NCBI GenBank assembly: GCA_025594325.1
Contig: JANHCV010000007.1
Span: 1,860,001-1,924,000 of the forward strand
DNA: 64,000 nucleotides
Source of the DNA: Blastocladiella emersonii ATCC 22665
Taxonomy: Eukaryota > Fungi > Blastocladiomycota
Reading direction: 5' to 3'
Of the stretch, positions 24,764 to 39,476 are shown in pieces. Each line of letters starts with the position of its first letter. Within the stretch, counting starts at the first letter, position 1. Made by a program: the position numbers and the translations under genes. Under the pieces are notes generated by a model, which had not been told where the DNA came from, did no database searches, and saw only the letters and a program-made list of their open reading frames with translations.

Positions 24764-26443
24764 TCAAACGCCACGGACCCACTCGGCCGTGCGCGCGACA
24801 CTCCACCCGCGGCGGTAACCGATCTGGACGCGCTTCTCGAACTCGCCCGCCGACAGCCGCGTCGTGTGGTTGCCGAGCGCGTCGAACACGTCGGCGCTGT
24901 ACTCGAGCGGCGAGTACAGGTCCTCGATCTTGGGCTTGACGTCCTCGCGCTCGTCGTCGCTCGACATGGTCAGGTCCACCACCTCGATCACCTTGCCCGA
25001 CGCCACCTGGTTCGGATGCTGCTGCTGCGGCAGAGTCGGCGCCGGCGGTGCCGCGGCGGGCTCATTGGGAGCCAAACGGGGTGGTGTCGGGGGCGGGGAT
25101 GGCGAGGGATCCCTGGACGCGGAAACGATGCGGCGCTGAGGAGCCACGGTGCCGGTCGTCCGCCTCGCCGTGTGCCGCGACTTGCGGCGCGGCTTGGGGG
25201 GCGCGGCAAGCACTTCCGAGTCAAAGTCCTGCTCGAAGCTGTACACCGGCGTGGGAGCAGTAAACCGGCGCCGCGGCGCGACTGGTTCGAAAGCGGGTAG
25301 CGGGGGCTCCTCGACCGGTGCCGCGGCAGCAGATGCGGCAGCCGCAGCAGCCACTGCAGCCGAGGGACGGCGACCGCGCGGGACCGAATCGGCCGGTGCG
25401 TTGCGGCGCTGCCGCTTGGCCGCGCGGCCGGCGACAAACGGCTCCTCGTCGACCGGGTTCGGCGCGCCGCGGGGCCGCTTGGCCGCCATAGCGCGCGGCG
25501 TGCGGAACTTGATGAGCTCGTTGAGCGCCTCCTCGTCGGAGCCGTCCGTCATATCGGCGGCGATCCGTGCCACGTCGACGTTGTTCCCGTCAAACAGCAG
25601 CACCGCGTTCATCGTGTCGGGGGCGGCGCGGACCGTGCACTCGGCGGGGATCTGGAACGCGCCGGGCGGGCGCAAGCCCGCGCACAGGCCAATGTACTCG
25701 AGGATGCGCTTCTCGAGCGCGCGCTTGAACGCGCCGCCCGCCTCGAGCCCGAACCCGAGCTCCGGCTCAATATAGTTAACCGGGTTGAACCACGCCAGAC
25801 GCAGCACGCCCGGGTGGTCGACGCGCACCGTGTACAGCCGGACTAAGACTTCTTGCTTGGCGAAAAGCTTCATGACCGCGTCGGCGAGCAGCGCCAGTGC
25901 ATCGCGCCGCGGAATCTCGGCCGGCGCTGCGTGCTTCTTGAGGTGCTGCCACAGCGCGATCCGGACCAGTGTGCAGAGGTTGAGCTGCTCGAGCGTCTCG
26001 CACCGGTGAATCTTGGGCTTGCGGCCAGGCTGGTGCGCATCGTCATCTTCATCGGATTCGGACCCGGATGCATCGGAATCGGACCCCCACGGAGGCGACG
26101 GGGACGACGAGCGAGAGCGGGGCGGCGTGTCGACCGACGAAAGCGGAGACGCGGGCGACTGCGGCGAAGGAGGGCCCGAGCGAAAGTCTTGCGAGCTCGA
26201 ATCCGCAGCCGCACTCGGCGAAGGCAATGCTGACGTAGTAGCGAGCGCGGCGAGCGCGGCAAGGGCTGCGCTGGCACTGGCCGACGAAGAGCGACGGCGC
26301 CGCTGCTCCTGCGGTTCGTCAATCGAAGCAGGCGAGCCGTCGTCGGTATCGCTCGGGATTGTATGCACAAGGGGCGAGGCGGGAATCTCGCTGCTGCGCG
26401 AGGACGAGCGTTTGGTGCGAGTTGCAGTGGGTCGTCCGCTCAT
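24764..26443 (-). CDS. Tandem-array family member 1 (unassigned central domain, SIM, C-terminal GW module)
   Basis: MSGRPTATRT; CETLEQLNLC; AFQIPAECTVRAAP; VIEVVDLTMSSDDERE; YSADVFDALG...YRRGWSVARTAEWVRGV. Central domain is ~30 aa shorter than in its siblings. Confidence 0.8.
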   Translation of the reverse strand: MSGRPTATRTKRSSSRSSEIPASPLVHTIPSDTDDGSPASIDEPQEQRRRRSSSASASAALAALAALATTSALPSPSAAADSSSQDFRSGPPSPQSPASPLSSVDTPPRSRSSSPSPPWGSDSDASGSESDEDDDAHQPGRKPKIHRCETLEQLNLCTLVRIALWQHLKKHAAPAEIPRRDALALLADAVMKLFAKQEVLVRLYTVRVDHPGVLRLAWFNPVNYIEPELGFGLEAGGAFKRALEKRILEYIGLCAGLRPPGAFQIPAECTVRAAPDTMNAVLLFDGNNVDVARIAADMTDGSDEEALNELIKFRTPRAMAAKRPRGAPNPVDEEPFVAGRAAKRQRRNAPADSVPRGRRPSAAVAAAAAASAAAAPVEEPPLPAFEPVAPRRRFTAPTPVYSFEQDFDSEVLAAPPKPRRKSRHTARRTTGTVAPQRRIVSASRDPSPSPPPTPPRLAPNEPAAAPPAPTLPQQQHPNQVASGKVIEVVDLTMSSDDEREDVKPKIEDLYSPLEYSADVFDALGNHTTRLSAGEFEKRVQIGYRRGWSVARTAEWVRGV

Positions 26444-26577
26444 GGTTGCTGCTGCGATTGCATTCGATTCACATTCATGGAGAGCTGAGGAAGTCAGCGG
26501 GGCCCGGCCGGTCAACAAGCAATTTCAGGGGTTCCCAGTGAGCAAGGCCGGTGCCACACATGCGCACCGCAACACAT

Positions 26578-26604
26578 CACATGATAATGCGTCGCGTCTC
26601 GCAC
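26578..26604 (-). promoter_or_regulatory. Bipartite motif upstream of member 1 (+ strand CACATGATA-N8-CGTCTCGCAC)
   Basis: One mismatch to the consensus, 8-nt spacer, ~135 bp upstream of the ATG. Confidence 0.6.
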
Positions 26605-27326
26605 CCTCGGTTGCCGCGCGATGCATGCTCGCACTACTCGAAATGTCTATGCAATGGTCTCCACTATGATAGAACTGACTTTAAGTATCGTCTCAAGCTT
26701 GTGTGCTGCAGGCCGGCACAGTCGACGGCGTGATCTCTGTCCAAGGAAAACTCTTTCGTCGGCTTGATGACAGTTCGTGACAGTTCTCTTCCTGTGATAT
26801 GATGGCAGTTCAGGACTGTCGTCGTCCTGCGAGACGCCGCAGTGACTTCAGTGGGCGTGCCACAGCGGCCACGAGCAACAGTCATTGTGACTGTAAAACT
26901 CATGGAAGCTTACCTGAAAGGGCCTTTTTCATCAACGAAGCATCTATTTTCTTTGTCCGCTCTGTGATTCCAGTAAGTACGTGCCGGTTGATGGGCGGGT
27001 GATGGTCGTCGTGACACGCTGGTCGCAACACGGGTCGGCTGCCTTTTGACTTGGATATCTCACGATTTCCTGGACTCCTTTCAAATTTACTATGACTATG
27101 AGGTTCAATGACCTCGAATCTCGGCTCAGGACATTACGGAAAGCTGGTATTCTTCGAGTTCGCTTGCATTCGCTGTGTCGCGCTCCGCGACGCGTCGATG
27201 GAGCAGCTTCACCCTCTCCGACCGACCTCTCGCTACCATGACCGCCGATAAGCTCAAAAAGTCCGCCTAGAGTGGTTGGTATCAGAAAAGGAATAAATTA
27301 ATACATCTCGGTTGTGGTACACGAGC

Positions 27327-29033
27327 TCAAACTCCGCGGATCCACTCGGCCGTCCGCTCGACACTCCATCCGCGTCGGAACGCAATCTGGATACGCTTCT
27401 CGAAATCGCCCGTCGACAGCCGCGTCGTGTGGTTCCCGAGCGCATCGAACACGTCGGCGCTGAACTCGAGCGCCGCGTCCGCGCCCTCGACCTTGACCTT
27501 GACGACGACGGGCGGCGGGGCGTCGCTGCTGCTGTCCGTGAACTGGTTGGGTTCTGGGCTGTACTGCTGGTACGATGGTACCGTTTCCGGTGCAGCGGAC
27601 GACGCGCGCGAGGTGGATGCCGACTGCGGTCGCGGGCGCGGGCGCGGAGGTACTGGCGCTGCTGCACGCGTGGACGACGAGGCGACCGTACGCGGCGCTG
27701 GCACCTCGACTGGACGCCGAGACGCACGGCGTGGTGGCGGAGGAGCAGCAGCAGCGAAATCGGAAGAGTCGAGGTCGAAGATGGACTCGGGCGCGGCGGA
27801 CCGGCGTCGGCGCCGCTTGGTCGCGGGCGGCAGCGGCGGGCGGCCGGGGCGAAAGTCGGGGTCGTTGTCGTCGTCAATGACGTACGCGGCCGCCACAGCG
27901 CAGACGCGGGAGCGTTCCTCGGCGGTCAGCGCAGCATAGACGGGGAGCTCCTCCTTGACGCGGACTGGGCGGGCATCGCGGGCGTCGTCAGCGGCAGCGT
28001 CCTCGTAGTAGTAGCGCTTGCGCGACGCCTGGACCTTGAGCAGCTCGCCGACCGTGTCGCCGTCGGTCTCGTCGAGCACGGCGGGCTTGACGCGCAGGGC
28101 GTCGAGCTCGCAGCTGTACTCGAAGACGCCGAGCACGCTCTCGGGCGCGTTGCGGACCGTCAGGTCGGCGGGGATGTGGAAGATGCACGGCTCGAACATC
28201 TCGGCGCACGCGTGGATGTAGTGGTCGATCTTGGCGTCGAGGGCGGCGGCAAACTGGGCCGCGCGCCAGCGCAGGACGCCGAGCGTGGACTCGAGGAACT
28301 TTTCCGGCATGCGCCACTTGAGCTGCAGCGTGCCCGGGTAGTCGACGCGCGTCGTGTACATTTTCACCTGCACGCCGGGCAGCTCGAGGAGCGCCGTGAC
28401 CGCGTCGCTCAGCAGCCGGCGCGCGCGGTTGTAGTCGACGGGCGAGCGCAGGCCCCAGTACTTGCCGTCCACGTCCTGCACGGGGAACGACGCCTCGCGG
28501 TACGCCTTGTCGGCGTCGGGCCCCTTCTCGCGCAGCGCACGCAGGTGGTGCCACACGGCGACGCGGAGCAGCGTGTAGAAGTTGAGGTCCTCGACCGTCT
28601 CGCAGCACAGCCCGTCGTACGACGTCTCGGGCGACTCGTCGTCCTCCTCGTTGGGCGACCCGGGTTCGGCGGGCGCGTCTGCTCTTGACTCGGGTCTCGA
28701 GTCCGAGTCGGGCGAGGAAGTGCGGCCGTTCGGCGGCGTGCTGATTGACGACAGCGACGAAGCCGGCGAAGCCGATTCGGGCGAGGCGGGCACCGTCGCG
28801 GGCGCCGAGGTGGTGCGCGAGGTATCCGGCGGCGTCGGGGGCGACACCGTCGTTGCGAGGGCAGCGGGTACAGACGACGCGCGAAGCGGCTCCATGTTCA
28901 GGGAGAGGCCGCGGCCGAGGCCGTCGGGCGTGCGGGACCGCGGGCGGGTGGAGTCAAGGCCGGCGCTGTTGCGGGAAGCGGGACGAGGTGCGTGGCGGAG
29001 TTTGGTCCGCGTTGCAATAGGTCGCTCGACCAT
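27327..29033 (-). CDS. Tandem-array family member 2
   Basis: 568 aa; MVERPIATRT; CETVEDLNF; LRVKPAVLDETDG; FSADVFDALG...FRRGWSVERTAEWIRGV; no VIDLT SIM. Confidence 0.85.
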   Translation of the reverse strand: MVERPIATRTKLRHAPRPASRNSAGLDSTRPRSRTPDGLGRGLSLNMEPLRASSVPAALATTVSPPTPPDTSRTTSAPATVPASPESASPASSLSSISTPPNGRTSSPDSDSRPESRADAPAEPGSPNEEDDESPETSYDGLCCETVEDLNFYTLLRVAVWHHLRALREKGPDADKAYREASFPVQDVDGKYWGLRSPVDYNRARRLLSDAVTALLELPGVQVKMYTTRVDYPGTLQLKWRMPEKFLESTLGVLRWRAAQFAAALDAKIDHYIHACAEMFEPCIFHIPADLTVRNAPESVLGVFEYSCELDALRVKPAVLDETDGDTVGELLKVQASRKRYYYEDAAADDARDARPVRVKEELPVYAALTAEERSRVCAVAAAYVIDDDNDPDFRPGRPPLPPATKRRRRRSAAPESIFDLDSSDFAAAAPPPPRRASRRPVEVPAPRTVASSSTRAAAPVPPRPRPRPQSASTSRASSAAPETVPSYQQYSPEPNQFTDSSSDAPPPVVVKVKVEGADAALEFSADVFDALGNHTTRLSTGDFEKRIQIAFRRGWSVERTAEWIRGV

Positions 29034-29147
29034 GATTCATGAGCTGCGTAGGATGGGGTGTGCGGGAAGGGAGGGAGAGCGCGCCCCGGTTGCCAAGTCA
29101 AGTCGCGCACGCGCGCGCTGGCTGAAACGCGGGCCCGGCCGTCGAGT

Positions 29148-29174
29148 CACGCCTTTTCGCGACGCGTCTCGCGC
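29148..29174 (-). promoter_or_regulatory. Degenerate bipartite motif upstream of member 2 (+ strand CACGCCTTT-N8-CGTCTCGCGC)
   Basis: Spacing is conserved; the E-box half is degenerate. Confidence 0.35.
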
Positions 29175-29239
29175 GCTCTCCTCCCCGTCGGCAATCAACC
29201 TTGCCCGGGAGAGAAACAGCTTCCAACCAGAATATAGCC

Positions 29240-29352
29240 GGATCGGATCTCGCCTAGCCGCTCGGCCGTCCGCGACGCGATCCTGCCGCGGTAGCAGTCC
29301 GCGACGCGATCCTGCCGCGGTAGCGCGATCCGGACGCGCTCCTCGAACTTAC
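29240..29352 (-). pseudogene. Isolated relic of the family C-terminal module, with a 28-bp tandem duplication (29268-29295, 29297-29324)
   Basis: Minus strand reads KFEERVRIA...YRGRIASRTAERL, compared with consensus EFEKRVRIAYRRGWSVARTAEW. Confidence 0.5.
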
Positions 29353-29425
29353 ACTTTGGTACTCGCGTCGCGGCGGCACGGCTGCGACAGGATCAGACAG
29401 GGAAACGGGAGAGGAAACAGTTGCA

Positions 29426-30856
29426 TCAATCGAAAGGGACGCACTCACGTGAGAGAAGACCGCTCGTGCATGCGGATCCACTTGGCCGTCCGCGCCGCGC
29501 TCCATCCGCGGCGGCCGTCTTGACGTGGGTCACAAATTCGCCATCCGGGACCCGCTGCGCGTGCTCGCCGAGCGCGTCAAACACGTCTGCACTGAACTCC
29601 TTCTCGGGGTCCAGGCCCTGGAGCACTTCGAGCTTGGGCTTGATGTCCTCGTCGTCGTCCGACATGGTCAGGTCGATGATCTCGGTCTGCTTGGCCTGTT
29701 GCGGACGCGCCTCGGGCTTCTTGATCCCACCAAGCGGTTCGTAGCCCGCGGCGCGGGACGGTCCCGAGTTGAGCTGCTGTGGCCGTGGTACCAATGGTGT
29801 CGCGGATCGCGGCCCGGGACTCGAACGTGAGGGCGAGTGTACGTCCTCGCGCGGGCCTTCTGCACCTGGTGTGCGCCGTGGCCGAAGTCGCTGGGGCATG
29901 AGTTCGGCCTCGGAATCGGATCCGTCGTCCACGTCCCGGCGATTCCGTTTCCGGGGCACGTTGGTCTGCAAGGGCTTGACGATGGATTCCGCGACCGTGT
30001 CGTCCTCGATATCCCCGTCGAGCGCGGCGGGCGCGACACGCAGCAAATGGGGATCGCCGCTGACCTCAAAGAGGGCCAAAATGTGGTCAGGAGCTTTGCG
30101 CACTCGGTTGATTGCTGGGATGCGGAAGACAGCGGGCTCGGCCATGTTGCAGCAAGCGCGGATGTACCAGTTTAGCTTGAAGTCAAGCACGGACGCGAAC
30201 TCGTTGGCCCGCCAGTCGCCACGGATTTTGAGAGTCTCGCTCATCTTCTCGTTGAGTTTCCGCATCACGGCCATGAGCACAGCGCTCTGGCTCTTGGAAT
30301 TTGCATTGACGTAAAGCTTGACGAGGGCACCCGATTCCTTGGGGAGCGCCATGATAGCATCACGGAGCAGCTTGCGCGCGCGAGCCAAGTCGGCGGGATC
30401 TGCCAGAACCCGCTGCCCGTCGTCGTCGACCTTGGTGGCGAACGACACCTCGCGGTACGCGCGGTCGGCGTCGGGGTCGCTCCTGAGTTGCTCCCCCACG
30501 GCGATGCGGAGTAAGCGACAAAAATTGGAGTCGTCGACCGTCCTGCAACGCTGGCCCGCCTTGGCGGTCCCGAGCAAGCCCAGGTCGGGGAGCGTGCGCT
30601 CCGCTTCCGATTCAGACCCGGAGCTCGGCTTGGAAGCGGGCGGGGGCACGGAGCGCTCGATGGGGGAGGAGGGCAAGGAGCGCTCGGTGAGCGAGGAGGG
30701 CTGCGGTGGCGAGTCCGGGCTTCCGTCGCCGCCGCCGCCGGGGGAGCTCGGCGCAGCGGCACCGAGTTCGCTGCCAGCGTCGTCGTCGCTGGGCACGGCG
30801 GGCCCGGCGCTCAAGCGCCTAGTACGAGTTGCAGTAGGTTTCCCGGACGTTTTCAT
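29426..30856 (-). CDS. Tandem-array family member 3, frameshifted in the last helix
   Basis: MKTSGKPTATRT; central domain close to member 4; EIIDLTMSDDDED. About 4 bp are missing near 29512, which moves RRGWSAARTAKWIRM out of frame. Confidence 0.8.
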   Translation of the reverse strand: MKTSGKPTATRTRRLSAGPAVPSDDDAGSELGAAAPSSPGGGGDGSPDSPPQPSSLTERSLPSSPIERSVPPPASKPSSGSESEAERTLPDLGLLGTAKAGQRCRTVDDSNFCRLLRIAVGEQLRSDPDADRAYREVSFATKVDDDGQRVLADPADLARARKLLRDAIMALPKESGALVKLYVNANSKSQSAVLMAVMRKLNEKMSETLKIRGDWRANEFASVLDFKLNWYIRACCNMAEPAVFRIPAINRVRKAPDHILALFEVSGDPHLLRVAPAALDGDIEDDTVAESIVKPLQTNVPRKRNRRDVDDGSDSEAELMPQRLRPRRTPGAEGPREDVHSPSRSSPGPRSATPLVPRPQQLNSGPSRAAGYEPLGGIKKPEARPQQAKQTEIIDLTMSDDDEDIKPKLEVLQGLDPEKEFSADVFDALGEHAQRVPDGEFVTHVKTAAADGARRGRPSGSACTSGLLSRECVPFD

Positions 30857-30933
30857 ATGTTGCATACGCAAAGGTGAGGCGACGGGAGGAGCGAGGCCGA
30901 GCGCAGGGTGAGACAAACGAATTATGGCCGACC

Positions 30934-30960
30934 CACGTGATAAATCAACGCGTCTCGCAC
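30934..30960 (-). promoter_or_regulatory. Bipartite motif upstream of member 3 (+ strand CACGTGATA-N8-CGTCTCGCAC)
   Basis: Perfect match, ~80 bp upstream of the ATG. Confidence 0.65.
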
Positions 30961-31250
30961 TGTATCCGCAACGCGCCTCACACGCGAGTCTACTCTATCG
31001 AGAGCGACTTGCTCCAAAAATGATTCCGGATTGAAGGAACTATACATTTCGTAGGCGCGAACGCGGATGCTCTACTCGCAACGAAATGCGGCGTGGACGC
31101 TCCCTCAGTGCTCGTGACGATCCCACGCACCGACGCAAACACGAGGCACGATTAATGGAGTGCTCGAGAGAGTTACTTTCAGGAGGACTCGTGTTCGGAA
31201 ACAGTTGCGTGTATTAACAAGTACATTCATGCGCGACAGAACCGCTCGGC

Positions 31251-32546
31251 TCAGAGCATGCGGATCCACTCGGCCGTCCGAGCCTTGTCCCAGCCTCGGC
31301 GGAACGCCGTCTTGATGCGCTTCCCGAGCTCGCCCGGCGGGACCCGCTTCCGATCCTCGCCAAGCTCTTCAAACACGTCGGCGCTGAACTCGGTCTCGGG
31401 ATCAAGGCCGGGGAGCTTCTCGACCTCTGGCTTGACGTCCTCGTCGTCTGACGTGGTCAGATCAACGACCTCGGTCGCCTTGGTCTGCTGTGCATGCGTG
31501 CCGGGCCCCTCGGCCCCGCTGGTCGGCGTGCGGCGCACGGAACGGGATGGTCCCGCATCGAGCTGCTGCGGCCGCGGTGCTGCGAGTCGCGAACTGGGTG
31601 TAGAGCGAGAGGAAGCGGGCTGGCCAGCGCCCGGACCTGGGCCTGCACGTGCCGCGTGCCGGGGCCGGAGGCGCCGTGTCACCGAGTCGGCCTCGGCACC
31701 GTCCTTGGGCTCGTCGCTCGTGTCCTGGCGCGTCCGTTTCCGTTTCCCGGACACACCCTTTTGCTGGGCCTTGACGAGATCGGCGACCACGTCTTCATCG
31801 TCCCCGTCAAGGACAGCGGGCGCGACGCGCAGCGAGTGGAGGTCGTCGCTGGTGACCTCGAAGACGCCAAGAATCTGCTCCGGCGCCTGACGCACCCGAT
31901 GATGCGCGGGGATGCGGAACGCGCAAGGCTCGGCCATGGTGCAGCAAGCGCGGATGTACCAGTCGAGCTTGGAATCAAGCACTGCCGCAGACTCGTCGGC
32001 CAGCCAGTCGCCGCACACGTTGAGAATCTGGCCCATCTTTTCGCCGAACTTCATCTTCACGAGAAGAAGCGTCGAGTGGCGGTTCGGATTGCCCTCGGCG
32101 TACATTCTGACATGTCCTGCACCAATTTCCTCGACGAGCGCCATGAGAGCATCACGGAGCAGCTGGCGCGCGCGAGCCAAGTCGGCGGGATCTGCGAGCA
32201 CGCGCTGCCCGTTCTCGTCGACCTTGGTGGCGAATGACGCCTCGCGGAACACGCGGTCGGCGTCGGGGTCGTTTTCGAGTTGATGCCACGCTGCGACTCG
32301 GAGCACGAGAGAAAAATTGATATCCTCGAGTGTCGCACAGGCCTGGTTCCCGGCCCCGATCTCGCGCGAGCCCAAGTCGGGCAGATCGCGCGCCGTCTCG
32401 GATCCAGGCTCGGATTTCGGCGGCAAGTCGAGGTCAGGTGCGTCGCCTTCGTCGCTCGGCGAGGTCAGCGCGGCGCCGTCGTCGCGCGGGTCGGTGGGGA
32501 CGGCGCTCACGCGCCTAGTGCGAGTTGCGGTAGGTTTCGTGGACAT
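31251..32546 (-). CDS. Tandem-array family member 4
   Basis: 431 aa; MSTKPTATRT; GKRKRTR; EVVDLTTSDDEDVKPE; AFRRGWDKARTAEWIRML. Confidence 0.85.
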   Translation of the reverse strand: MSTKPTATRTRRVSAVPTDPRDDGAALTSPSDEGDAPDLDLPPKSEPGSETARDLPDLGSREIGAGNQACATLEDINFSLVLRVAAWHQLENDPDADRVFREASFATKVDENGQRVLADPADLARARQLLRDALMALVEEIGAGHVRMYAEGNPNRHSTLLLVKMKFGEKMGQILNVCGDWLADESAAVLDSKLDWYIRACCTMAEPCAFRIPAHHRVRQAPEQILGVFEVTSDDLHSLRVAPAVLDGDDEDVVADLVKAQQKGVSGKRKRTRQDTSDEPKDGAEADSVTRRLRPRHAARAGPGPGAGQPASSRSTPSSRLAAPRPQQLDAGPSRSVRRTPTSGAEGPGTHAQQTKATEVVDLTTSDDEDVKPEVEKLPGLDPETEFSADVFEELGEDRKRVPPGELGKRIKTAFRRGWDKARTAEWIRML

Positions 32547-32674
32547 TTTTCATACGATTCATGCGCTAAAGTGGGGCGGCAGGGAGGGGGAGAGGCAAAA
32601 CGCTCGCTTGGGCGGCGGTGCCGCGGCGACGCCACAAGCGCAGGGCGTGACAACATGAACTCCTGAACTCGGTT

Positions 32675-32701
32675 CACGTGATAAACTGATGCGTCTCGCA
32701 C
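32675..32701 (-). promoter_or_regulatory. Bipartite motif upstream of member 4
   Basis: Perfect CACGTGATA-N8-CGTCTCGCAC on the + strand, ~130 bp upstream of the ATG. Confidence 0.65.
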
Positions 32702-32843
32702 TGCTTCGGCGTCGAGCCCGAAGCCTGTGGCCGCCCTGCGAGTACCGCTCGCACCCGATTCACTCACCAATGCCGCCGAGCAGTTTGTTAGCAAAACAAG
32801 CGTGTATAGAAGCGCAACATCAAGGCAACAAACTCTTGCCCAC

Positions 32844-34409
32844 TCACATGCGGCGAAGCCACTCGGCCGTGCGCGCGACGGTCCACCCGCGGCGGAACGC
32901 GGTCTGGATGCTCTCGTAGAACTCGCCCGACGGCAGTCTGGGCTTGTGCGTGCCGAGCGCCTCGAACACGTCGGCGTTGAACTCGACGTTTGACGCGCGC
33001 CGCTCGATCTTGATCTTGACGTCCTTGGGCTCGTCGTCGTCGCTCGACATGGTCAAGTCGATGACCGCCGTCGGGCGCTCGTTCGGCGCCGAGCGAGCGG
33101 CGACGCGCGGAACGGGCAGCACCGCGGCCGCGGCTTGGTCAACGAGCGCCGCGGGCTGGGTCGAGGCCGGGCGAGGGGACGGCGAGCGAGGGCGAGGAGT
33201 TGGTGGTTCTAGGCGAGGGGATGGTGGCTGAGGGGGAGGGGATGGTGACCGAGGGCGAGGAGCTGGTGGTTGAAGGCGAGGAGCCGGCGGTTGCGGGGGA
33301 GGAAACGGTGGCTGCGTGCGTGGAGCCGGTGGTTGAAGGCTTGGCGACGGTGGTTGCGGGCGAGGAGACGGCGGTCGAGCCGGCAAGCGCGAGGGCGTGA
33401 GCACACGCGAAGCGCTGGGCGATTCGGAAAGCGAGATCGATGAGTCCGCGCGCGGCGCTGCGCCAATCGAACGCCGGATGCGGCGCACAGGCGGCGGCGG
33501 CGGCGGTGTGCTCTCCGCAACCTCTGGGGCAGGCTCGTCCATCTCGTCGTAGTTGCGCTTGATCGACGTGTGCTGCTTCGTAATCAAGTCGGCGATCGTC
33601 GCGCCGTCCTCCTCGTCCAAGACGGCGGGAGCGACGCGCAGCGCGGCGGATGCGGGGCAGTACTCGAAGACGCCGAAAAAGAGCTCGGGAGCGCTGCGCA
33701 CCGACATGCCGGCGGGGATGCGAAAGAGGCTGGGCGCGTCCATGTTGAGGCACGCGTCGACGTACTGATCGAGCGTCTGCTTGAGCGCCGTGGCAAAGAG
33801 AGACGAGCGCAGGTGCTGCAGGCCAATGAGCTTCGCCATGTTGGTATGCGGAAGCATCGGAATGAGCTGCAGCATCGACGGGGTCACGCTGCGATTTATG
33901 TAAAGCTTGATGTGCTGGCCCATGTTAAGGATCAGCGGCATGAGAGCGTCGCTGAGGAGCTGCCGAGCGCGAGCAGCATCGGCGGGATGCGTGAACGATC
34001 GCTTGTTGTTCTCGCCGGTCTGGACGGGGAACGCGGCGTCGTAGTACGCGCGCTCGTCGTCGACGCTGTCCGCGCGCAGAGTCCGAAGGTGGCTGAACAC
34101 GGCGACGCGGACCAGGAGACAAAAATTAAGATTGTCGACCGACTCGCAGCGCACGCCGTTCTGCGGGGTCGCGCCGGGCGCCGGCGGCAACGACCTTGGT
34201 AGCGAAGTTGATCTAGGCGAGTAGGACGAGTGGGTCGACGACGGAGAGGCGGAATCCGAGGCGTTTCCTGGCGGCGAGATCGACTGCGAATTGGCAGCAG
34301 AGCGACCAAGCGTGGAGGTGCTGCGGCCGCGGCCGCGGCCGCGGCCAGAGGACCCAGATTGCGTGGTGCTGCGTGTTCGTGTCCGCATCGCGATTGGTTC
34401 CTCGGGCAT
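32844..34409 (-). CDS. Tandem-array family member 5, with ~10 heptad Pro/Ser repeats
   Basis: 521 aa; CESVDNLNF; LRVAPAVLDEEDG; PPSPRPQ-type repeats; AVIDLTMSSDDDE; VKIKIE; AFRRGWTVARTAEWLRRM. Confidence 0.85.
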   Translation of the reverse strand: MPEEPIAMRTRTRSTTQSGSSGRGRGRGRSTSTLGRSAANSQSISPPGNASDSASPSSTHSSYSPRSTSLPRSLPPAPGATPQNGVRCESVDNLNFCLLVRVAVFSHLRTLRADSVDDERAYYDAAFPVQTGENNKRSFTHPADAARARQLLSDALMPLILNMGQHIKLYINRSVTPSMLQLIPMLPHTNMAKLIGLQHLRSSLFATALKQTLDQYVDACLNMDAPSLFRIPAGMSVRSAPELFFGVFEYCPASAALRVAPAVLDEEDGATIADLITKQHTSIKRNYDEMDEPAPEVAESTPPPPPPVRRIRRSIGAAPRADSSISLSESPSASRVLTPSRLPARPPSPRPQPPSPSLQPPAPRTQPPFPPPQPPAPRLQPPAPRPRSPSPPPQPPSPRLEPPTPRPRSPSPRPASTQPAALVDQAAAAVLPVPRVAARSAPNERPTAVIDLTMSSDDDEPKDVKIKIERRASNVEFNADVFEALGTHKPRLPSGEFYESIQTAFRRGWTVARTAEWLRRM

Positions 34410-34561
34410 GTTACATTAGCTCCGTTGCGTATAGAGTGCCTGAAGCGAGAGCGCGGAGGGGAGGAGGGGCCCGGCGAGCGTTTGCGTTGGTCGAGAGGGT
34501 CCCGAACTCGTGCGCGTCGCGCTCTCCGCCCGTGGGAGCGGCGCCCACGTGTCGCATGAGG

Positions 34562-35530
34562 TCATTTCGGCTCATTTAAACGGAGCCCCGTGGGCCTGCT
34601 GTTAGCTTTGGGCAACCCGGACAGCGTGGCGTGTGAGAGCGGCGGCCAACACGAAGAAACTCGACGTGGGCGGAGACTGGCCACATGTAAAACCCGCTCA
34701 CGTGATATCGCAACACGTCTCGCACTGTCTCGCGCCCCGCGAGTCGCCGATCGCGCGACGACCCCACGCTCAAAAGGCAAACACAGCGCGTTGATATACA
34801 CAATGTTGATACAAAACAGCCCAATTCCCGCGCGACGCTCCACCCGCGGAATGCACTTGAAGAACTTGCCGGCGGGGAGCCCGGTCGCGTGCGACCCGAG
34901 CGCGTCGAACACGTCGGCGTTGAAATCGGCCATCGTAGCGAGCTCGTTGATCTTGGGCTTGACGTCCTTGGGCTCATCGTCGTCGCTGGACATGGTCAGG
35001 TCGATGACGGGGGTCTTGATGGTCGACTGCGGCGCTGGCGTCGGCGGCGGCGGACGCGGAACTCGCGGAGGCGGTGGTTGCAGCTGCTGGACCGGCGCCG
35101 TCTCGGACTCCGTCTCGTTGGGCGTCGAGCGAGTAGGCATCGCTGCGAGCAGCGAGTTCGGGACCGCGGGCTGCTCGGCACCAGTCGTGTTTGGGGCAGG
35201 AAAGCGCGGTGGTACCCCTGTTTGCAGACGCGACGGCAAGGGCAAGGGCGAGGCTGCAAGGCGAGGTGCAGGCGAAGCGGGAAGCAAGGGCGAGGGCGGC
35301 GGGGGCGAAGCCGCGCGCAAGGGTTGCGGCGGTGAAGCCGCGAGTAAATGTCGGGGTGGCGAAACCGCGAGGAACGGTGGCGGCGGCGATGTCGCGAGCA
35401 AGGGTCGGGGCGGCGAAGCTGCAGCCGCAGCCGCACCCAACGGCCGAAGCGGCGGTCGCGGAGCGAACGTGTTTAGTAAAACGTGCCTATCATGGTAGAG
35501 CCGTTTTGAACGGCGGAGCTCGTCACTCAA
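34562..35530 (-). pseudogene. Tandem-array family member 6: no central domain, 9-aa repeats, SIM kept, C-terminal module frameshifted
   Basis: PVIDLTMSDDDEPKDVKPK and FNADVFDALGSH...GKFFK, after which AFRGWSVAR lies in another frame. Confidence 0.65.
34699..34725 (-). promoter_or_regulatory. Bipartite motif upstream of member 5
   Basis: Perfect CACGTGATA-N8-CGTCTCGCAC on the + strand, ~290 bp upstream of the member 5 ATG and inside the out-of-frame tail of member 6. Confidence 0.6.
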
Positions 35531-35903
35531 CAGAACGCGAGCGGCGGGGCGAGAGCGGCCGCAGTCGACGAGGTGCGTGGCGGCTGCGGCGAGGGGGTGT
35601 CGAACAGCTCAGGTTCGACCTTACGCCGGATCCGGCGCGCAGGCGCGGGTGCGCGTCGCGATTGGTTCGTAATACATGGTTCAGAAGCAAGCTGCATGGC
35701 GGGCGAGGTCGGGGGAGCGAGCGTTGGAGCGGGGTGGAGCGGAAAGCGCGAGCGCCTGCCAAAACCAACGCGTGGGTCGACCGTGGGCCCGCCCGCCGGT
35801 CGCGTTTGCCGCGCTCCCGCCGCGCCCTCGCCGCTGCCTGATGCTTCTGCTGATCCCATGAATCTCAATGGACATATAACCCAACGCTCTCATCACTGCG
35901 GCC

Positions 35904-37661
35904 TCACACCCCGCGGATCCACGCGGCCGCGTGCGACACCGTCCACGCGCGGCCGAACGCGACCCGGACGCGCCGCTCGAACTCGCCCGGCGGCAGCCGC
36001 CCCGCGTGGTAGCCGACCTCGTCGAACACGCTGGCGCTGTACTGGAGCATCAGGTCCTCGACCACCTCCGGGGGCTTGACGTCCTCAGGCTCGTCGTCGG
36101 ACTTGGTCAGGTCGACGACGGTGGCCTGCTTCTTGGGCTGCTGCGGCCCCGTCGCCGTCGCCTCGTGCTCGTTGGGCACCGAGCGGGGCACATCGTGTGC
36201 GGCGAGGACCGGCGGCGGGATGACTTCGGGCAGCTCAGCACCGGGCACAGGTGGGACAGGAAGCGGCGAGAACGACGTGGTGGGCGTGGACACGGGCGGG
36301 CTGGATCGCGTGGGCAACGGGGAGGGAGACGGTGATGGCGAGCGAGTGCGAGGCTGTGCCACGTGCAGGTTCCAGTTGGTCTTGACGAGGACCTGACTCA
36401 CACGCAGCGTCGACGGGCGGGTCTTGAGGTCCACGCCGGCCTGGTCCGTGGCCTTGGCGCGGGTGCACTCGCGCGGGGCAGGCTCCTGCTCGACCGTGCT
36501 CGCGAGCTCGCCGTCCTCGGCCTCGGTGCGGCTCCGCTTGCGCGAGGCGTGCTCCTGCTCGACCGCGTTGGCGATCTCGCGGTCCTCAGGGGCCAGGTTG
36601 GACTCGTCGCGGCTCCGCTCGGGCGAGGCGTGCTCCTCGGTGCGGCTCCGCTTACGCGACGCGCGCTGCTGCGCGACCGCATCGGCGAGCTCGTGGTCCT
36701 TTGAGTCCACGCCGGCCTCGTCGCCGCACCGCTTCTTCCGCGACGACGGCGCGTGGCCCAGATCGACCATGCCAGCGAGCCGTGTGCTGTCGGACTCGTC
36801 GAGCACGCCGGGCGCGACGCGCAGCGCGGTGCCGTCGGCGGTGCGCTCGAAGACGCCGCGGACATGGGCGGGCGCGCCGCGCACCTCGAACCCGTCGGGG
36901 ATGCGGAACATGCACGGCGCGAGCGCGCTGGTGCACGCCGCGAGGTACCGGTCGAGCTTGGCCTTGAGCGCCGGCATGAACTTGGCGTCGCGCCAGTCGC
37001 GCACACCTACGAGCCACCGGAGTTGGTTCCACGGCGACATGAAACCGAGCTGCAGCAGCGGCAGATGGTGGTCGGCGCGCTTCGCGTACATCTTGACGCG
37101 CAGCGGTGGGCCGGCGAGAAGCGCCATCACGGCGTCGATCAGCAGCTGGCGCGCGCGCGGCTGGTCGGCGAGGTGCCCGTCGTCCTGGATCGTGAACGAC
37201 GCGGCGCGGTACTCGCGGTCGCCGTCGCGGTCGTTGCGCTCGCGCAGCGCCGCGAGGTGCCGCCACACGGCGACGCGGAGCAGCACGCAGAAGTTGAGCT
37301 CGTCGACCGACGCGCACGCCACGCCCTTGGGCGCCGCGACGTCGGGATCGAGCTGCGGACCGTGGTCGGGCGCAGGAGACGGCACCGACGAGAGCTCCGA
37401 GTCGGATGGGTCGGGCTCCAGCGACGTGTAGCCGGGCGGGCGCTTGGAGCGCGGGCACGCGCCCGAGCGTCGGCGCGGCGGCTTACTGGCGGGCGGCTCG
37501 GGCGAGATGGGCGGGGTGGGGACTGCGGTAGGATGCGCCGGCGTTGGGGTTGAGGGCACCGCGGTCGGCGCTGGTCCAGCGGGGCCGCCGCCGCTGTCGA
37601 GCGAGGCGCGGCGCGAGGATCGGCGCAGTTTGGTGCGAGTCGCGGTGGGTTGATCGGGCAT
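35904..37661 (-). CDS. Tandem-array family member 7
   Basis: 585 aa; MPDQPTATRT; CASVDELNF; LRVAPGVLDESD; repeated ASRKRSRTE; TVVDLTKSDDE; AFGRAWTVSHAAAWIRGV. Confidence 0.85.
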   Translation of the reverse strand: MPDQPTATRTKLRRSSRRASLDSGGGPAGPAPTAVPSTPTPAHPTAVPTPPISPEPPASKPPRRRSGACPRSKRPPGYTSLEPDPSDSELSSVPSPAPDHGPQLDPDVAAPKGVACASVDELNFCVLLRVAVWRHLAALRERNDRDGDREYRAASFTIQDDGHLADQPRARQLLIDAVMALLAGPPLRVKMYAKRADHHLPLLQLGFMSPWNQLRWLVGVRDWRDAKFMPALKAKLDRYLAACTSALAPCMFRIPDGFEVRGAPAHVRGVFERTADGTALRVAPGVLDESDSTRLAGMVDLGHAPSSRKKRCGDEAGVDSKDHELADAVAQQRASRKRSRTEEHASPERSRDESNLAPEDREIANAVEQEHASRKRSRTEAEDGELASTVEQEPAPRECTRAKATDQAGVDLKTRPSTLRVSQVLVKTNWNLHVAQPRTRSPSPSPSPLPTRSSPPVSTPTTSFSPLPVPPVPGAELPEVIPPPVLAAHDVPRSVPNEHEATATGPQQPKKQATVVDLTKSDDEPEDVKPPEVVEDLMLQYSASVFDEVGYHAGRLPPGEFERRVRVAFGRAWTVSHAAAWIRGV

Positions 37662-37865: not shown

Positions 37866-39476
37866 TCACATACCGCCCATCCACGCGACCGTGCGCTCCA
37901 CGGTCCACCCGCGTCGGTACGCGATCACGATGCGCTTGTCGAACTCGCCCGCCGACAGCCGCGCCGTGTGCGGGCCGAGCGCCTCGAACACGTCGGCGCT
38001 GAACTCGAGCGCCGCGTCCGAGTCGTCGACCTTGGGCTGGACGTTCTCGCGCTTGTTGGCCGCAGCCGAGGCGAACGCGACGATGGCGTTGGACTGCACG
38101 GGGCGCTGCGGCGGCGGCGGCGCCCTGGTCTCGTTGGGCACCGAGCGAGGAGCACCGCGCGGGGCCGCCTCAGTCGACACCAAACCCGAACCATGACGGA
38201 GCGGCAGCGGCGGAGGGAGCGGCGGGAGGGGCGGCAGGATCGGCAGCGTCACGACGGGCGTACGCGTGGACGGCGGCGGCGTCGGGACGACATGCATCGC
38301 GACCGCAGCCCTGCGCCGAACCGGACGCGCGGGCACCGGGGTGAACTCGCCCTCGTCGCCGTTCTCGTCGTCGGACGCCGCGTCCACCGTCGCGGTGCGC
38401 TTGCGCTTGTGCACGATGCGCTTGCAGAGCATCGACCCGACCACGCCGGCGTCGGTCTCGGCAAGGACGGCGGGCGCAACGCGCAGGATGCCGCGTTCGC
38501 GGTCGATGTCAAACACGCCGTGGATGCCGCCCGGCGCGGCGTGCACCTCGCAGTCGAAGGGGATGTGGAAGATGCACGGCGGGTCCATGCCGGCGCACGC
38601 GCGGACGTACTCGTCGAGCTTACGGTCGAGCGCCGCGGCGAGGTGGTGCGAGGCCGCGTCGCGGACGCCGACGAGCTTGGCGAGGTTGCTGCCGGGCAGC
38701 ATGCGGTGGAGCGACAGCATGCCCCCGTGGTCGGACCGCATCGTGTACAGCCGCACGCGCGCCTCCGGGTCGCCGATGAAGGCCATGATCGCGTCACCGA
38801 GCAGCTTGCGCGCGCGAGCCGCGTCGACGGGATCGGCCACGACGCGGCGGTTGGCCTCGTCGAGGTGGACGGGGAACGCCGCGTCGCGGTACGCGCGGTA
38901 CGCGCGCTCGGCGTCGGCGCCGCGCTCGCGCAGCGACCGCAGATGGCGTAGCACCGCGATGCGGACCATCACGCAGAAGTTGAGGTCGTCGTGCGACGCG
39001 CAGTGCACCGTGTTGGGCGCCGACTCCTCCTCGGGCTGCTCGGCCTCGTGCGATTGCTCCAACTCCTGCCCTCGCTCTGACGCCTCTGCCTGATCCGATC
39101 CCTGCACAGGCTCGGGCTCCTGCTCCGGCTCCAGCTCCGCCTCGAGCTCCGGTTCCGCCTCGGGCGCAAACTGAAGCGACGGGTGGATGGGCGAAGCGGG
39201 GAACGTCGGCTGCGGGAGCATGGGCGCGCCGAAGAGGGAGTGGGCCGACGCGGGCGGCGAGGCGAGGAAGGCGGCAACGGCCGCGCCGTCGTCGAACTGC
39301 GGCCACGGGAGCGAGGGCGTCATGGACGTCGAGCTCTTCTGCGTGTTCGGGGCGAGGCCGGGCGCGGGGGCGGGTAGCGGCCGGGGAGGACCGAGCGCGT
39401 CGCGGATCGTCGAGTGATGGACGGGGACCACGTCAGGGAGCGACGCTGCGCGTGCTGCGAGCGGGCGGTCGGCCAT
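37866..39476 (-). CDS. Tandem-array family member 8
   Basis: Likely start MADRPLAAR at 39476; CASHDDLNF; HKRKR; FSADVFEALG...YRRGWTVERTVAWM; no SIM. Confidence 0.82.
   Translation of the reverse strand: MADRPLAARAASLPDVVPVHHSTIRDALGPPRPLPAPAPGLAPNTQKSSTSMTPSLPWPQFDDGAAVAAFLASPPASAHSLFGAPMLPQPTFPASPIHPSLQFAPEAEPELEAELEPEQEPEPVQGSDQAEASERGQELEQSHEAEQPEEESAPNTVHCASHDDLNFCVMVRIAVLRHLRSLRERGADAERAYRAYRDAAFPVHLDEANRRVVADPVDAARARKLLGDAIMAFIGDPEARVRLYTMRSDHGGMLSLHRMLPGSNLAKLVGVRDAASHHLAAALDRKLDEYVRACAGMDPPCIFHIPFDCEVHAAPGGIHGVFDIDRERGILRVAPAVLAETDAGVVGSMLCKRIVHKRKRTATVDAASDDENGDEGEFTPVPARPVRRRAAVAMHVVPTPPPSTRTPVVTLPILPPLPPLPPPLPLRHGSGLVSTEAAPRGAPRSVPNETRAPPPPQRPVQSNAIVAFASAAANKRENVQPKVDDSDAALEFSADVFEALGPHTARLSAGEFDKRIVIAYRRGWTVERTVAWMGGM

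What the first reader, a model, noticed from the sequence alone, without database searches (positions are those of the whole stretch)
24940..36130. PIAS-type SUMO-interacting motif, SUMO-acceptor-like lysines and NLS-like clusters, present in some copies and absent in others
Seen: VIEVVDLTMSSDDERE (copy 1), EIIDLTMSDDDED (3), EVVDLTTSDDED (4), AVIDLTMSSDDDE (5), PVIDLTMSDDDE (6) and TVVDLTKSDDE (7), each followed by a D(V/I)K motif (DVKP, DIKP, DVKI). Copies 2, 8, 9 and 10 lack it. psi-K-x-E sites occur in copies 2 (VKVE, VKEE), 4 (VKPE) and 5 (IKIE). Basic clusters (GKRKRTR, HKRKR, PRKRNRR, PRKRDR) follow the central domain. Established: (V/I)(I/V)DLT plus an acidic/Ser tract is the classical SIM of PIAS E3 ligases. 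Inference: nuclear SUMO-binding proteins, with paralogues diversified by keeping or losing the SIM. The motif is conserved while the surrounding linker is unalignable, which implies selection.
Basis: partly seen in the sequence, partly recalled or inferred. Interest (0 to 1): 0.72.

Follow-up and report, generated by a model that had tools for sequence, protein, structure and literature searches.

The report
SUMO-binding motif in fungal gene array
Ten neighbouring copies of a gene family found only in the water fungus Blastocladiella emersonii encode proteins of unknown function, and six of them carry a textbook docking site for the protein tag SUMO that the other four have lost or never had; binding has not been tested.

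Summary
[VI][VI]DLT followed by Ser and an acidic run occurs in copies 1, 3, 4, 5, 6 and 7. These are the only six hits in the six-frame translation of the window; 0.012 are expected in the family. Each copy has one such site. It lies in a predicted disordered stretch, 21-23 residues before a 45-residue three-helix C-terminal domain, and is followed by a D[VI]K box. It is the best-conserved 10-mer of otherwise unalignable linkers.

The genome is Blastocladiella emersonii ATCC 22665. The family is an orphan: Pfam, PDB sequences, word searches and a full HMMER scan of 1.84 billion representatives return only the array's own gene models. The central 200-residue domain folds confidently (pLDDT 86) but matches no known fold. 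Winged-helix domains are a weak lead.

- These are not PIAS proteins; only the motif is shared.
- Copy 3 has a 4-bp frameshift and copy 6 is a decayed fragment, so there are four independent SIM lineages.
- Relics in copies 2 and 8 point to loss rather than gain.
- Strict psi-K-x-E sites are not above chance (P = 0.09).
- SUMO binding, nuclear location and expression remain untested; no RNA run was listed.

The scan had already noted this same stretch. It had also noted SIM-like tails on other tandem families of this genome.

The parts
24764..26443 (-). copy 1 (559 aa from the ATG at 26443), SIM-bearing. Its central domain is the most divergent and lacks a segment.
   Evidence: equals gene model P0001
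27327..29033 (-). copy 2 (568 aa), no SIM core. It keeps the relic FTDSSSD..VVVKVKVE at the SIM position.
29426..30859 (-). copy 3, SIM-bearing. A 4-bp deletion relative to copy 4 shifts the frame inside the C-terminal domain, and the normal stop is lost.
31251..32546 (-). copy 4 (431 aa), SIM-bearing and intact; sister of copy 3
   Evidence: support 96/94
32844..34409 (-). copy 5 (521 aa), SIM-bearing and intact
34562..35530 (-). copy 6, a decayed fragment. It keeps the SIM but has no central domain, and its C-terminal domain is frameshifted. A relic of the N-terminal motif, followed by stops, lies upstream at about 35.6-35.8 kb.
35904..37661 (-). copy 7 (585 aa), SIM-bearing and intact
37866..39476 (-). 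copy 8 (536 aa from the ATG at 39476), SIM degenerated to AIVAFASAA
39717..41066 (-). copy 9 (449 aa), SIM segment deleted
   Evidence: equals P0002
41267..42754 (-). copy 10, the divergent end member (22% identity to copy 9 in the central domain), with no SIM. The ORF extends to 43378. The GenBank model P0005 has a different 5' end.
24950..24982 (-). SIM plus Ser/acidic tail of copy 1, VVDLTMSSDDE
29645..29680 (-). SIM plus tail of copy 3, IIDLTMSDDDED
31437..31469 (-). SIM plus tail of copy 4, VVDLTTSDDED
33030..33065 (-). SIM plus tail of copy 5, VIDLTMSSDDDE
   Evidence: pLDDT below 50 in model m9a82b55e8042
34973..35008 (-). SIM plus tail of copy 6, VIDLTMSSDDDE
36090..36119 (-). SIM plus tail of copy 7, VVDLTKSDDE
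32847..32981 (-). 45-residue C-terminal three-helix domain, copy 5 as example. It has the same length in c1, c2, c4, c5, c7, c8 and c9: 24767-24901, 27330-27464, 31254-31388, 35907-36041, 37869-38003, 39720-39854.
40152..40754 (-). central alpha/beta domain of about 200 residues, copy 9 as example. In the others: c1 25460-26008, c2 28002-28616, c3 29930-30559, c4 31719-32351, c5 33540-34157, c7 36714-37325, c8 38388-39008, c10 42047-42616.
   Evidence: pLDDT 86.4, pTM 0.84
31728..31748 (-). NLS-like basic cluster GKRKRTR at the conserved site after the central domain, copy 4. In the others: c3 29936-29956, c8 38397-38411, c9 40161-40178, c1 25469-25480, c7 36729-36740.
33009..33023 (-). D[VI]K lysine box after the SIM (DVKIK in copy 5). 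In the others: c1 24929-24943, c3 29633-29647, c4 31425-31439, c7 36069-36083. Relics: c2 27492-27506, c8 38031-38045.

Best explanation
What it is: a head-to-tail array of ten paralogues of a protein family known only from Blastocladiella emersonii. Eight copies look intact, one is frameshifted and one is a fragment.

Each protein is modular:
- a conserved N-terminal P-T-A-T-R-T-[KR] motif;
- a disordered stretch;
- an alpha/beta domain of about 200 residues with no recognised fold;
- a basic, NLS-like K-R cluster;
- a Pro/Ser-rich disordered linker;
- a C-terminal module: a single SUMO-interacting motif of the psi-psi-DLT class with a Ser/acidic tail, a D-V-K-P-K lysine box, and, 21-23 residues after the SIM, a 45-residue three-helix bundle.

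Inferred mechanism:
- The four hydrophobic/DLT residues add a beta-strand in the groove between strand beta-2 and the helix of SUMO.
- The acidic residues, and the serines once phosphorylated by a CK2-type kinase, contact the basic rim of that groove.
- This tethers the SIM-bearing paralogues non-covalently to SUMO-modified, probably nuclear, partners.
- It may also favour SUMO conjugation to the neighbouring lysines.

The SIM was present in the common ancestor of copies 1-9. It was later destroyed in copy 2 (core deleted), copy 8 (substituted) and copy 9 (deleted), giving paralogues uncoupled from SUMO.

Shown: the motif, its position, its conservation, the domain layout and the absence of relatives. 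Inferred: SUMO binding, phospho-regulation, nuclear location and the role of the SIM-less copies.
For: - The motif is exact and unique in the window: 6 hits against 0.012 expected.
- Each copy has one SIM and no other canonical SIM.
- It is the top conserved 10-mer of the linkers in the four independent lineages c1, c3/c4, c5/c6 and c7, with synonymous codon differences.
- Spacing to the C-terminal domain is fixed at 21-23 residues, and every copy has CK2-type serines.
- The SIM stretch has pLDDT below 50, while the following three helices reach 70-80.
- Relics in c2 and c8 show loss from a SIM-bearing ancestor.
- The K-R cluster is invariant after the central domain; K[KR]x[KR] or RKKR occurs at that site in six of eight copies.
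- Lysines are concentrated after the SIM in a lysine-poor protein: 3 of copy 5's 10 lysines fall within 30 residues.
- Literature: the PIAS1 SIM is VIDLT and (I/V)DLT peptides bind SUMO (PMC4907222). KVDVIDLTIE is used as a SIM competitor peptide, and SIMs are a hydrophobic core plus acidic residues (PMC3526273). Serine phosphorylation next to a SIM raises SUMO affinity (PMC4276917).
- The genes are real. The domains stay in frame across eight copies although the linkers range from 99 to 224 residues. The central-domain model is confident with only 9 sequences.
Against: - There is no experimental or structural test of SUMO binding. Short hydrophobic motifs can serve other partners.
- No RNA run was listed, so expression is unknown. 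The public annotation appears to be ab initio.
- Two SIM copies are broken genes.
- Strict psi-K-x-E sites are not above chance.
- NG86 dN/dS in the central domain is 0.5-1.5. This could mean weak constraint, although GC3 of 0.76-0.98 makes dS unreliable.
- The paralogue tree does not resolve the number of losses.
- Nuclear location rests only on short basic clusters, which are common in Arg-rich proteins (9.6% Arg).
Confidence: 0.55

Rival explanations
1. The conserved psi-psi-DLT/acidic block is a functional linear motif that does not bind SUMO. It could be a beta-strand that docks onto the family's own central domain or onto a paralogue (auto-regulation or oligomerisation). It could also bind some other partner, with the D-V-K-P-K box and the three-helix bundle forming one binding module.
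For: - Spacing to the C-terminal domain is fixed at 21-23 residues, and the neighbouring D[VI]K box is conserved too. This suggests a larger composite module rather than a free-standing SIM.
- The D[VI]K box survives in copies 2 and 8 without the core.
- Nothing in the data tests SUMO directly.
Against: - The motif matches the most specific SIM class letter for letter, including the Ser/acidic tail.
- In the model of the C-terminal 90 residues the strand does not dock on the helices; it stays unstructured with pLDDT 42-44.
Confidence: 0.25
2. The motif has no present function. It persists by shared descent, or by gene conversion between neighbouring copies, in a fast-evolving and partly decaying family. 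Its absence in some copies is ordinary drift.
For: - NG86 dN/dS is near 1 in the central domain.
- Two copies are broken.
- c5 and c6 have an identical SIM block, consistent with recent duplication.
- c1 and c2 are 82% identical in the C-terminal domain but only 40% identical over their full length, which suggests local conversion.
Against: - Among lineages whose linkers are otherwise unalignable, the SIM block is the single best-conserved 10-mer.
- The codons differ synonymously: GTG/GTC/ATC, GAC/GAT, CTG/TTG, TCG/TCA/TCC. The copies are therefore not recent conversion products.
- c2, the closest C-terminal relative of c1, lacks the core. Conversion has not homogenised this spot.
- dS is deflated by GC3 up to 0.98.
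Confidence: 0.12
3. The block is a CtBP-type PxDLS co-repressor motif rather than a SIM.
For: The D-L-[ST] core resembles PxDL[ST] motifs. This comparison is from my own knowledge of the motif class.
Against: The defining first position (Pro, or Gly) is Val or Ile in all six copies. CtBP co-repressors are, to my knowledge, not a fungal system.
Confidence: 0.02
4. The ORFs are not genes but chance open frames of a DNA that is about 70% G+C.
For: Many long spurious ORFs overlap the region on other frames and on the other strand. No RNA evidence was available.
Against: - The domain-wise conservation pattern holds across ten copies.
- All linker length changes are in frame.
- The AlphaFold model is confident (pLDDT 86.4) from nine sequences.
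- N-terminal and C-terminal ends are conserved and sit exactly at the ORF ends.
Confidence: 0.01

Closest known systems
SIM of PIAS-family SUMO E3 ligases (PIAS1 VIDLT; peptide KVDVIDLTIE), a phospho-regulated SIM
   Same: Identical core [VI][VI]DLT, followed directly by Ser and an acidic run with CK2-type sites. It lies in a disordered region and occurs once per protein.
   Different: The rest of the protein is unrelated: no SAP, PINIT or SP-RING domain. Here the SIM sits 21-23 residues before a small three-helix C-terminal domain and is followed by a conserved D-V-K-P-K box.
SUMO-targeted ubiquitin ligases (RNF4, Slx5-Slx8) and other multi-SIM readers
   Same: They use psi-psi-DLT-type SIMs; RNF4 has IVDLT and VVDLT by my recollection. 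The SIM and STUbL concept is described in PMC3526273.
   Different: There is only one SIM per protein and no RING or other catalytic domain. This would be a mono-SUMO reader or adaptor, not a poly-SUMO ligase.
Other SIM-tailed tandem families noted by this scan in the same genome (DUF7918 array, s1-276129; s1-248153)
   Same: Tandem paralogue arrays of B. emersonii with disordered tails that carry SIM-like, SUMO-acceptor-like and NLS-like motifs. These are scan notes that I did not check.
   Different: It is a different protein family. None of the eight copies scanned (c1-c8) matches any Pfam model at E up to 1, and an exhaustive profile search finds no relatives outside the array.
Winged-helix domains of replication initiators and silencers (Orc1/Cdc6/Sir3 WHD, plasmid RepA WH1)
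   Same: These are the best, though weak, structural neighbours of the central domain: Sir3 wH at Z 3.9, several Orc1 and Cdc6 WHDs at Z 3.0-3.7, RepA WH1 at Z 2.7. A language-model feature search independently gives 26 of 30 hits in Rep3_N/WH1 clusters at score 0.91.
   Different: All scores are below the tools' own noise levels: Z under 4 against a typical best Z of 7-8, and 148-162 shared features where true family members usually share 170 or more. There is no sequence similarity. The domain is about twice the size of one WHD.

Membership tests
SUMO-interacting motif, psi-psi-DLT class (linear motif) | Hydrophobic core [VILM][VILM]-D-L-T | tested here: met
   Six copies. Absent from c2, c8, c9 and c10.
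SUMO-interacting motif, psi-psi-DLT class (linear motif) | Flanking acidic and/or phosphorylatable Ser/Thr residues | tested here: met
   All six have S/T-x-x-[DE] sites and 3-5 Asp/Glu within 8 residues.
SUMO-interacting motif, psi-psi-DLT class (linear motif) | Located in an accessible, disordered segment | tested here: met
   pLDDT is 42-44 and no secondary structure is predicted over the SIM stretch of copy 5. Only that copy was modelled.
SUMO-interacting motif, psi-psi-DLT class (linear motif) | Non-covalent binding to SUMO that is abolished by mutating the core | not testable with these tools
   Needs pull-down, ITC or NMR, or at least a complex prediction.
PIAS/Siz SP-RING SUMO E3 ligases | SP-RING (zf-MIZ) domain with PINIT and SAP domains | tested here: not met
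   No Pfam family at E up to 1 in the eight copies scanned, c1-c8. The profile search of PDB sequences is blank.
SUMO-targeted ubiquitin ligases | Several SIMs plus a RING domain | tested here: not met
   One SIM per copy and no RING.
SUMO acceptor consensus psi-K-x-E | Large hydrophobic residue, Lys, any residue, Glu | tested here: inconclusive
   Strict sites occur only in c2, c4 and c5: 4 against 1.8 expected, P = 0.09. A conserved Lys pair with a downstream acidic residue follows the SIM in c1-c8.
Classical monopartite nuclear localisation signal | K-[KR]-x-[KR] or four consecutive basic residues in an exposed segment | tested here: met
   Met at the conserved post-domain site in c1, c3, c4, c7, c8 and c9. 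Not met there in c2 and c5; c2 has one elsewhere (KRRRRR), c5 has none (RRIRR does not fit the pattern). The segment has pLDDT below 50. Actual nuclear import is not testable here.
CtBP-binding PxDLS motif | Pro (or Gly) two residues before D-L-[ST] | tested here: not met
   That position is Val or Ile in all six copies.
Winged-helix domain (Orc1/Cdc6/Sir3 WHD, RepA WH1) | Significant structural or profile similarity to a WH fold | tested here: inconclusive
   VIA best Z is 3.9. Foldseek finds nothing against PDB or BFVD. Atlas shape search gives TM at most 0.35. Atlas feature search scores 0.91 for Rep3_N.
DUF7918 (the other SIM-tailed array of this genome) | Match to the Pfam model | tested here: not met
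   No Pfam match at E up to 1. I did not confirm that DUF7918 is in the Pfam copy searched.

The most novel reading that the evidence does not exclude
The C-terminal module (SIM, lysine box and three-helix bundle) is a dedicated reader of SUMO, or of mixed SUMO/ubiquitin signals if the bundle is UBA/CUE-like.

It sits on an orphan domain, possibly winged-helix-like, that may bind chromatin. The array may have diversified together with the unusually expanded and divergent SUMO-like genes that this scan noted elsewhere in the B. emersonii genome.

On this reading, SIM-bearing and SIM-less paralogues would act as alternative or decoy subunits. This would be a lineage-specific SUMO-signalling branch in an early-diverging fungus, built on a fold not yet seen in solved structures.
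Probability: 0.12. Interest if true: 0.7.

Novelty: new member of a known kind. Interest (0 to 1): 0.4.

Why it matters
If the motif binds SUMO, the array is a natural series of related proteins with intact, degenerate and deleted SIMs. That is a ready-made comparison for asking what SUMO docking adds to a protein.

It occurs in an early-diverging fungus whose SUMO-like genes were themselves noted by this scan as expanded (not checked by me). The family is also a clean example of a lineage-restricted gene family. Its well-folded central domain has no detectable relatives among 1.84 billion representative proteins and no match among solved structures, which makes it a reasonable target for structure determination.

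By itself, a textbook SIM in an uncharacterised protein is not surprising.

Tried and rejected
- Pfam on the first eight copies and on copy 10: no family.
- Word-index protein searches with the full alignment, the central domain and the C-terminal domain: only the array's own models.
- Exhaustive HMMER profile search with the central domain: six self hits plus two spurious bacterial repeat proteins, P0007 and P0008, matched on short low-complexity stretches.
- PDB sequence profile searches: blank.
- Atlas search with whole copy 9: no usable hit.
- Fold searches of the central domain. Foldseek against PDB, Foldseek against BFVD and the Atlas shape search gave nothing. VIA-wide gave a best Z of 3.9.
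- Fold search of the C-terminal module: only generic three-helix bundles at Z up to 5.2. They include UBA, CUE and RuvA-III domains at about Z 4, which is not specific.
- Expression: no RNA run was listed.
- Mapping SIM loss on a tree. Only c3+c4 (96/94) and c8+c9 (87/86) are supported. A single SIM clade is not rejected (AU p = 0.089).
- dN/dS by NG86: uninformative because GC3 is 0.76-0.98.
- Rejected readings:
  - PIAS or STUbL membership: no domains.
  - CtBP PxDLS motif: wrong first position.
  - Viral or mobile origin: no BFVD match, base composition like the flanks, ordinary eukaryotic neighbours such as Misato-like Tubulin_3 and UBX genes.
  - Spurious ORFs.

Full report
**Source and context.** The window is part of contig JANHCV010000007.1 (2.02 Mb) of assembly GCA_025594325.1. 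This accession series belongs to the Blastocladiella emersonii genome paper. One gene model is named 'hypothetical protein H9P43_006557 [Blastocladiella emersonii ATCC 22665]'. G+C is 0.59-0.75 throughout. Many long overlapping ORFs on other frames are therefore composition artefacts. The neighbours are ordinary eukaryotic genes: a Misato-like Tubulin_3 protein, a UBX-domain gene and a Cep192/hydin-like ASH-domain protein.

**The array.** Ten paralogues lie head to tail on the minus strand between 24.7 and 43.4 kb.
- c1 24764-26443
- c2 27327-29033
- c3 29426-30859
- c4 31251-32546
- c5 32844-34409
- c6 34562-35530
- c7 35904-37661
- c8 37866-39476
- c9 39717-41066
- c10 41267-42754 (its ORF runs on to 43378)

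**Protein layout.** The alignment shows a fixed order of elements:
- an N-terminal motif, M-x-x-[RK]-P-T-A-T-R-T-[KR];
- a variable Ser/Pro-rich stretch;
- a central domain of about 200 residues;
- an invariant K-R inside a basic cluster;
- a Pro-rich linker of 99-224 residues that does not align between lineages;
- a P-N-[EQ] box;
- the motif under study;
- a D[VI]K lysine box;
- a C-terminal domain of exactly 45 residues in all seven intact copies.

**Check of the observation.** [VI][VI]DLT occurs six times in the six-frame translation of the whole window. All six are at the same position of this family. The expectation for the family's 4,943 residues is 0.012.

Each SIM-bearing copy has exactly one such site and no other canonical SIM. 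The SIM-less copies have none. All six sites are followed by Ser/Thr with Asp/Glu at +3 and by 3-5 acidic residues. They lie 21-23 residues before the C-terminal domain.

As a class they are not enriched: 4 against 1.8, P = 0.09. What is conserved is a lysine pair after the SIM in a lysine-poor protein.

**Is the motif under selection?** I used c1, c5 or c7 as reference and scored every 10-mer of its linker against the linkers of the other independent lineages. The SIM block is the top hit each time, followed by the adjacent acidic/D-V-K-P block. The codons differ synonymously between copies: GTG/GTC/ATC, GAC/GAT, CTG/TTG, TCG/TCA/TCC. So the blocks are old and retained, not recently copied.

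The exception is c5/c6, which share an identical SIM block and are probably a recent pair. Counting c3/c4 (sisters, support 96/94) and c5/c6 as one lineage each, the motif has been retained in four lineages.

**State of the copies.** c3 carries a 4-bp deletion relative to c4 inside the C-terminal domain, and its normal stop is lost. The conserved ending RRGWSAARTAKWIRM is readable in another frame.

c6 has no central domain, and its C-terminal domain is frameshifted. A relic of the N-terminal motif (EPIATRTR) followed by stops lies upstream. It is a decayed copy.

The GenBank models fuse neighbours: P0003 joins c8 and c7, and P0004 joins part of c3 with c2. The paper describes annotation with funannotate, and my term search of it found no mention of transcriptome data. 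The conserved N-terminal motif at each ATG argues for separate genes.

**Loss or gain?** c8 aligns AIVAFASAAANKRENVQPKVDD against the SIM blocks, for example ATVVDLTKSDDEPEDVKPPEV of c7. c2 aligns FTDSSSD..VVVKVKVE. c9 has a clean deletion. These relics indicate that the ancestor of c1-c9 had the motif.

The trees are poorly resolved. Only c3+c4 and c8+c9 (87/86) are supported. The ML tree needs three changes, and a single SIM clade is not rejected (AU p = 0.089). The number of losses is therefore between one and three. c10 is very divergent (22% identity to c9 in the central domain) and shows no trace of the motif.

**What the family is.**
- No Pfam family matches.
- Three word-index searches return only the array's own models.
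- A full HMMER profile scan of 1.84 billion representatives with the central domain returns six self hits and two spurious bacterial repeat proteins.
- Profile searches of PDB sequences are blank.

The family is thus an orphan of B. emersonii as far as predicted proteins go. Unannotated genomes of relatives could not be searched.

The central domain nevertheless gives a confident AlphaFold model from nine sequences: pLDDT 86.4 and pTM 0.84, a mixed alpha/beta fold.
- Foldseek finds nothing in the PDB or among viral models.
- The Atlas shape search stays at TM 0.35 or below.
- An exhaustive VIA alignment has a best Z of 3.9.

The top VIA rows are mostly winged-helix domains: Sir3, Orc1, Cdc6, Polycomblike, MukF/JetA and RepA WH1. 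A language-model feature search on the c2 domain independently returns Rep3_N/WH1 clusters in 26 of 30 hits, at score 0.91. Both signals are below the tools' stated noise levels, so winged-helix is a lead, not a finding.

The C-terminal 45 residues model as three helices (pLDDT 70-80). The preceding 40 residues, which include the SIM, are unstructured (pLDDT 42-44). The structural neighbours are generic three-helix bundles, with UBA/CUE domains among many others at about Z 4.

**Selection on the domains.** NG86 dN/dS in the central domain is 0.46-1.5. GC3 is 0.76-0.98, which deflates dS, so the ratio cannot be read as neutrality. Three things argue that these are genes under constraint: every linker length change is in frame, the hydrophobic core is conserved, and the model is confident. 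The family does, however, evolve fast.

**Interpretation.** The motif is letter for letter the psi-psi-DLT type of SIM.
- The PIAS1 SIM is VIDLT, and (I/V)DLT peptides bind SUMO (PMC4907222).
- KVDVIDLTIE is used as a competing SIM peptide, and SIMs are defined as a hydrophobic core flanked by acidic residues (PMC3526273).
- Phosphorylated serines next to a SIM raise SUMO affinity (PMC4276917, which cites Stehmeier and Muller 2009).

The most likely reading (about 0.55) is that the motif is a working, probably phospho-regulated, SIM. It would tether the SIM-bearing paralogues to SUMO-modified partners, and the basic cluster suggests a nuclear location.

The proteins are not PIAS or STUbL family members: they have no SP-RING or RING domain and only a single SIM. 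The main rival (about 0.25) is a conserved strand motif with another partner, including the family's own domains. Non-functional persistence (about 0.12) fits the fast evolution and the broken copies, but not the motif's rank in the linkers.

**Context from the scan (unchecked leads).** Earlier notes describe this same array (s1-265219, s1-265507, s1-265933, s1-265703, s1-265594). They also describe, elsewhere in this genome, other tandem families with SIM-like tails (s1-276129, s1-248153) and arrays of divergent SUMO-like genes (s1-076266, s1-292497). I used the SUMO-like gene notes only to frame the speculative 'novel case'.

**Limits.**
- No RNA run was listed, so expression is untested and read laying was not used.

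Noticed in passing
window 26411-26431, 29001-29021, 30818-30838, 32514-32534, 34377-34397, 37629-37649, 39444-39464, 41034-41054 (minus strand): Copies 1-5 and 7-9 begin with a conserved N-terminal motif, M-x-x-[RKEQ]-P-[TIL]-A-[TMA]-R-[TAS]-[KR]. P, A and R are invariant. The motif is degenerate in copy 8. Its function is unknown, and it marks each copy as a separate gene.
   Followed up: partly
window about 35600-35800 (minus strand), upstream of copy 6: A relic of the N-terminal motif (MYYEPIATRTR) is followed by stop codons. Copy 6 is therefore a full copy that lost its central domain, not a short gene.
   Followed up: partly
window 29426-29033 and 37866-37661 junctions; proteins P0003, P0004: The public gene models join neighbouring paralogues through predicted introns: c8+c7 as a 1063-aa protein, and part of c3 plus c2 as a 786-aa protein. 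These are probably annotation artefacts.
   Followed up: partly
window about 36500-36760 (minus strand), linker of copy 7: The linker holds two and a half tandem repeats of about 38 residues, E[LI]A[DN]AV[AE]Q[QE].ASRKRSRTE. Each carries a strong NLS-like RKRSR.
   Followed up: no
window 57829-58923 (+): An ORF matches the ISXO2/IS1595-like DDE transposase domain (Pfam E 1e-17). It lies in a lower-G+C block (0.59) at 52-60 kb and is probably a eukaryotic DNA transposon of that superfamily.
   Followed up: no
copies 1, 2, 5, 7, 8, 9; 10-25 residues upstream of the SIM position: A conserved P-N-[EQ] box (for example RSVPNE, ALPNES) lies in the otherwise unalignable linker. The Pro is invariant in the eight-copy alignment.
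   Followed up: no
central domains of all copies (for example window 40152-40754): NG86 dN/dS between paralogues is 0.46-1.5, with GC3 of 0.76-0.98. The family evolves fast, and extreme codon bias makes dS unusable here.
   Followed up: partly
window 24767-24901 compared with 27330-27464: The C-terminal domains of adjacent copies 1 and 2 are 82% identical, against 40% identity over their full length. This suggests local gene conversion that stopped short of the SIM, which copy 2 lacks.
   Followed up: no
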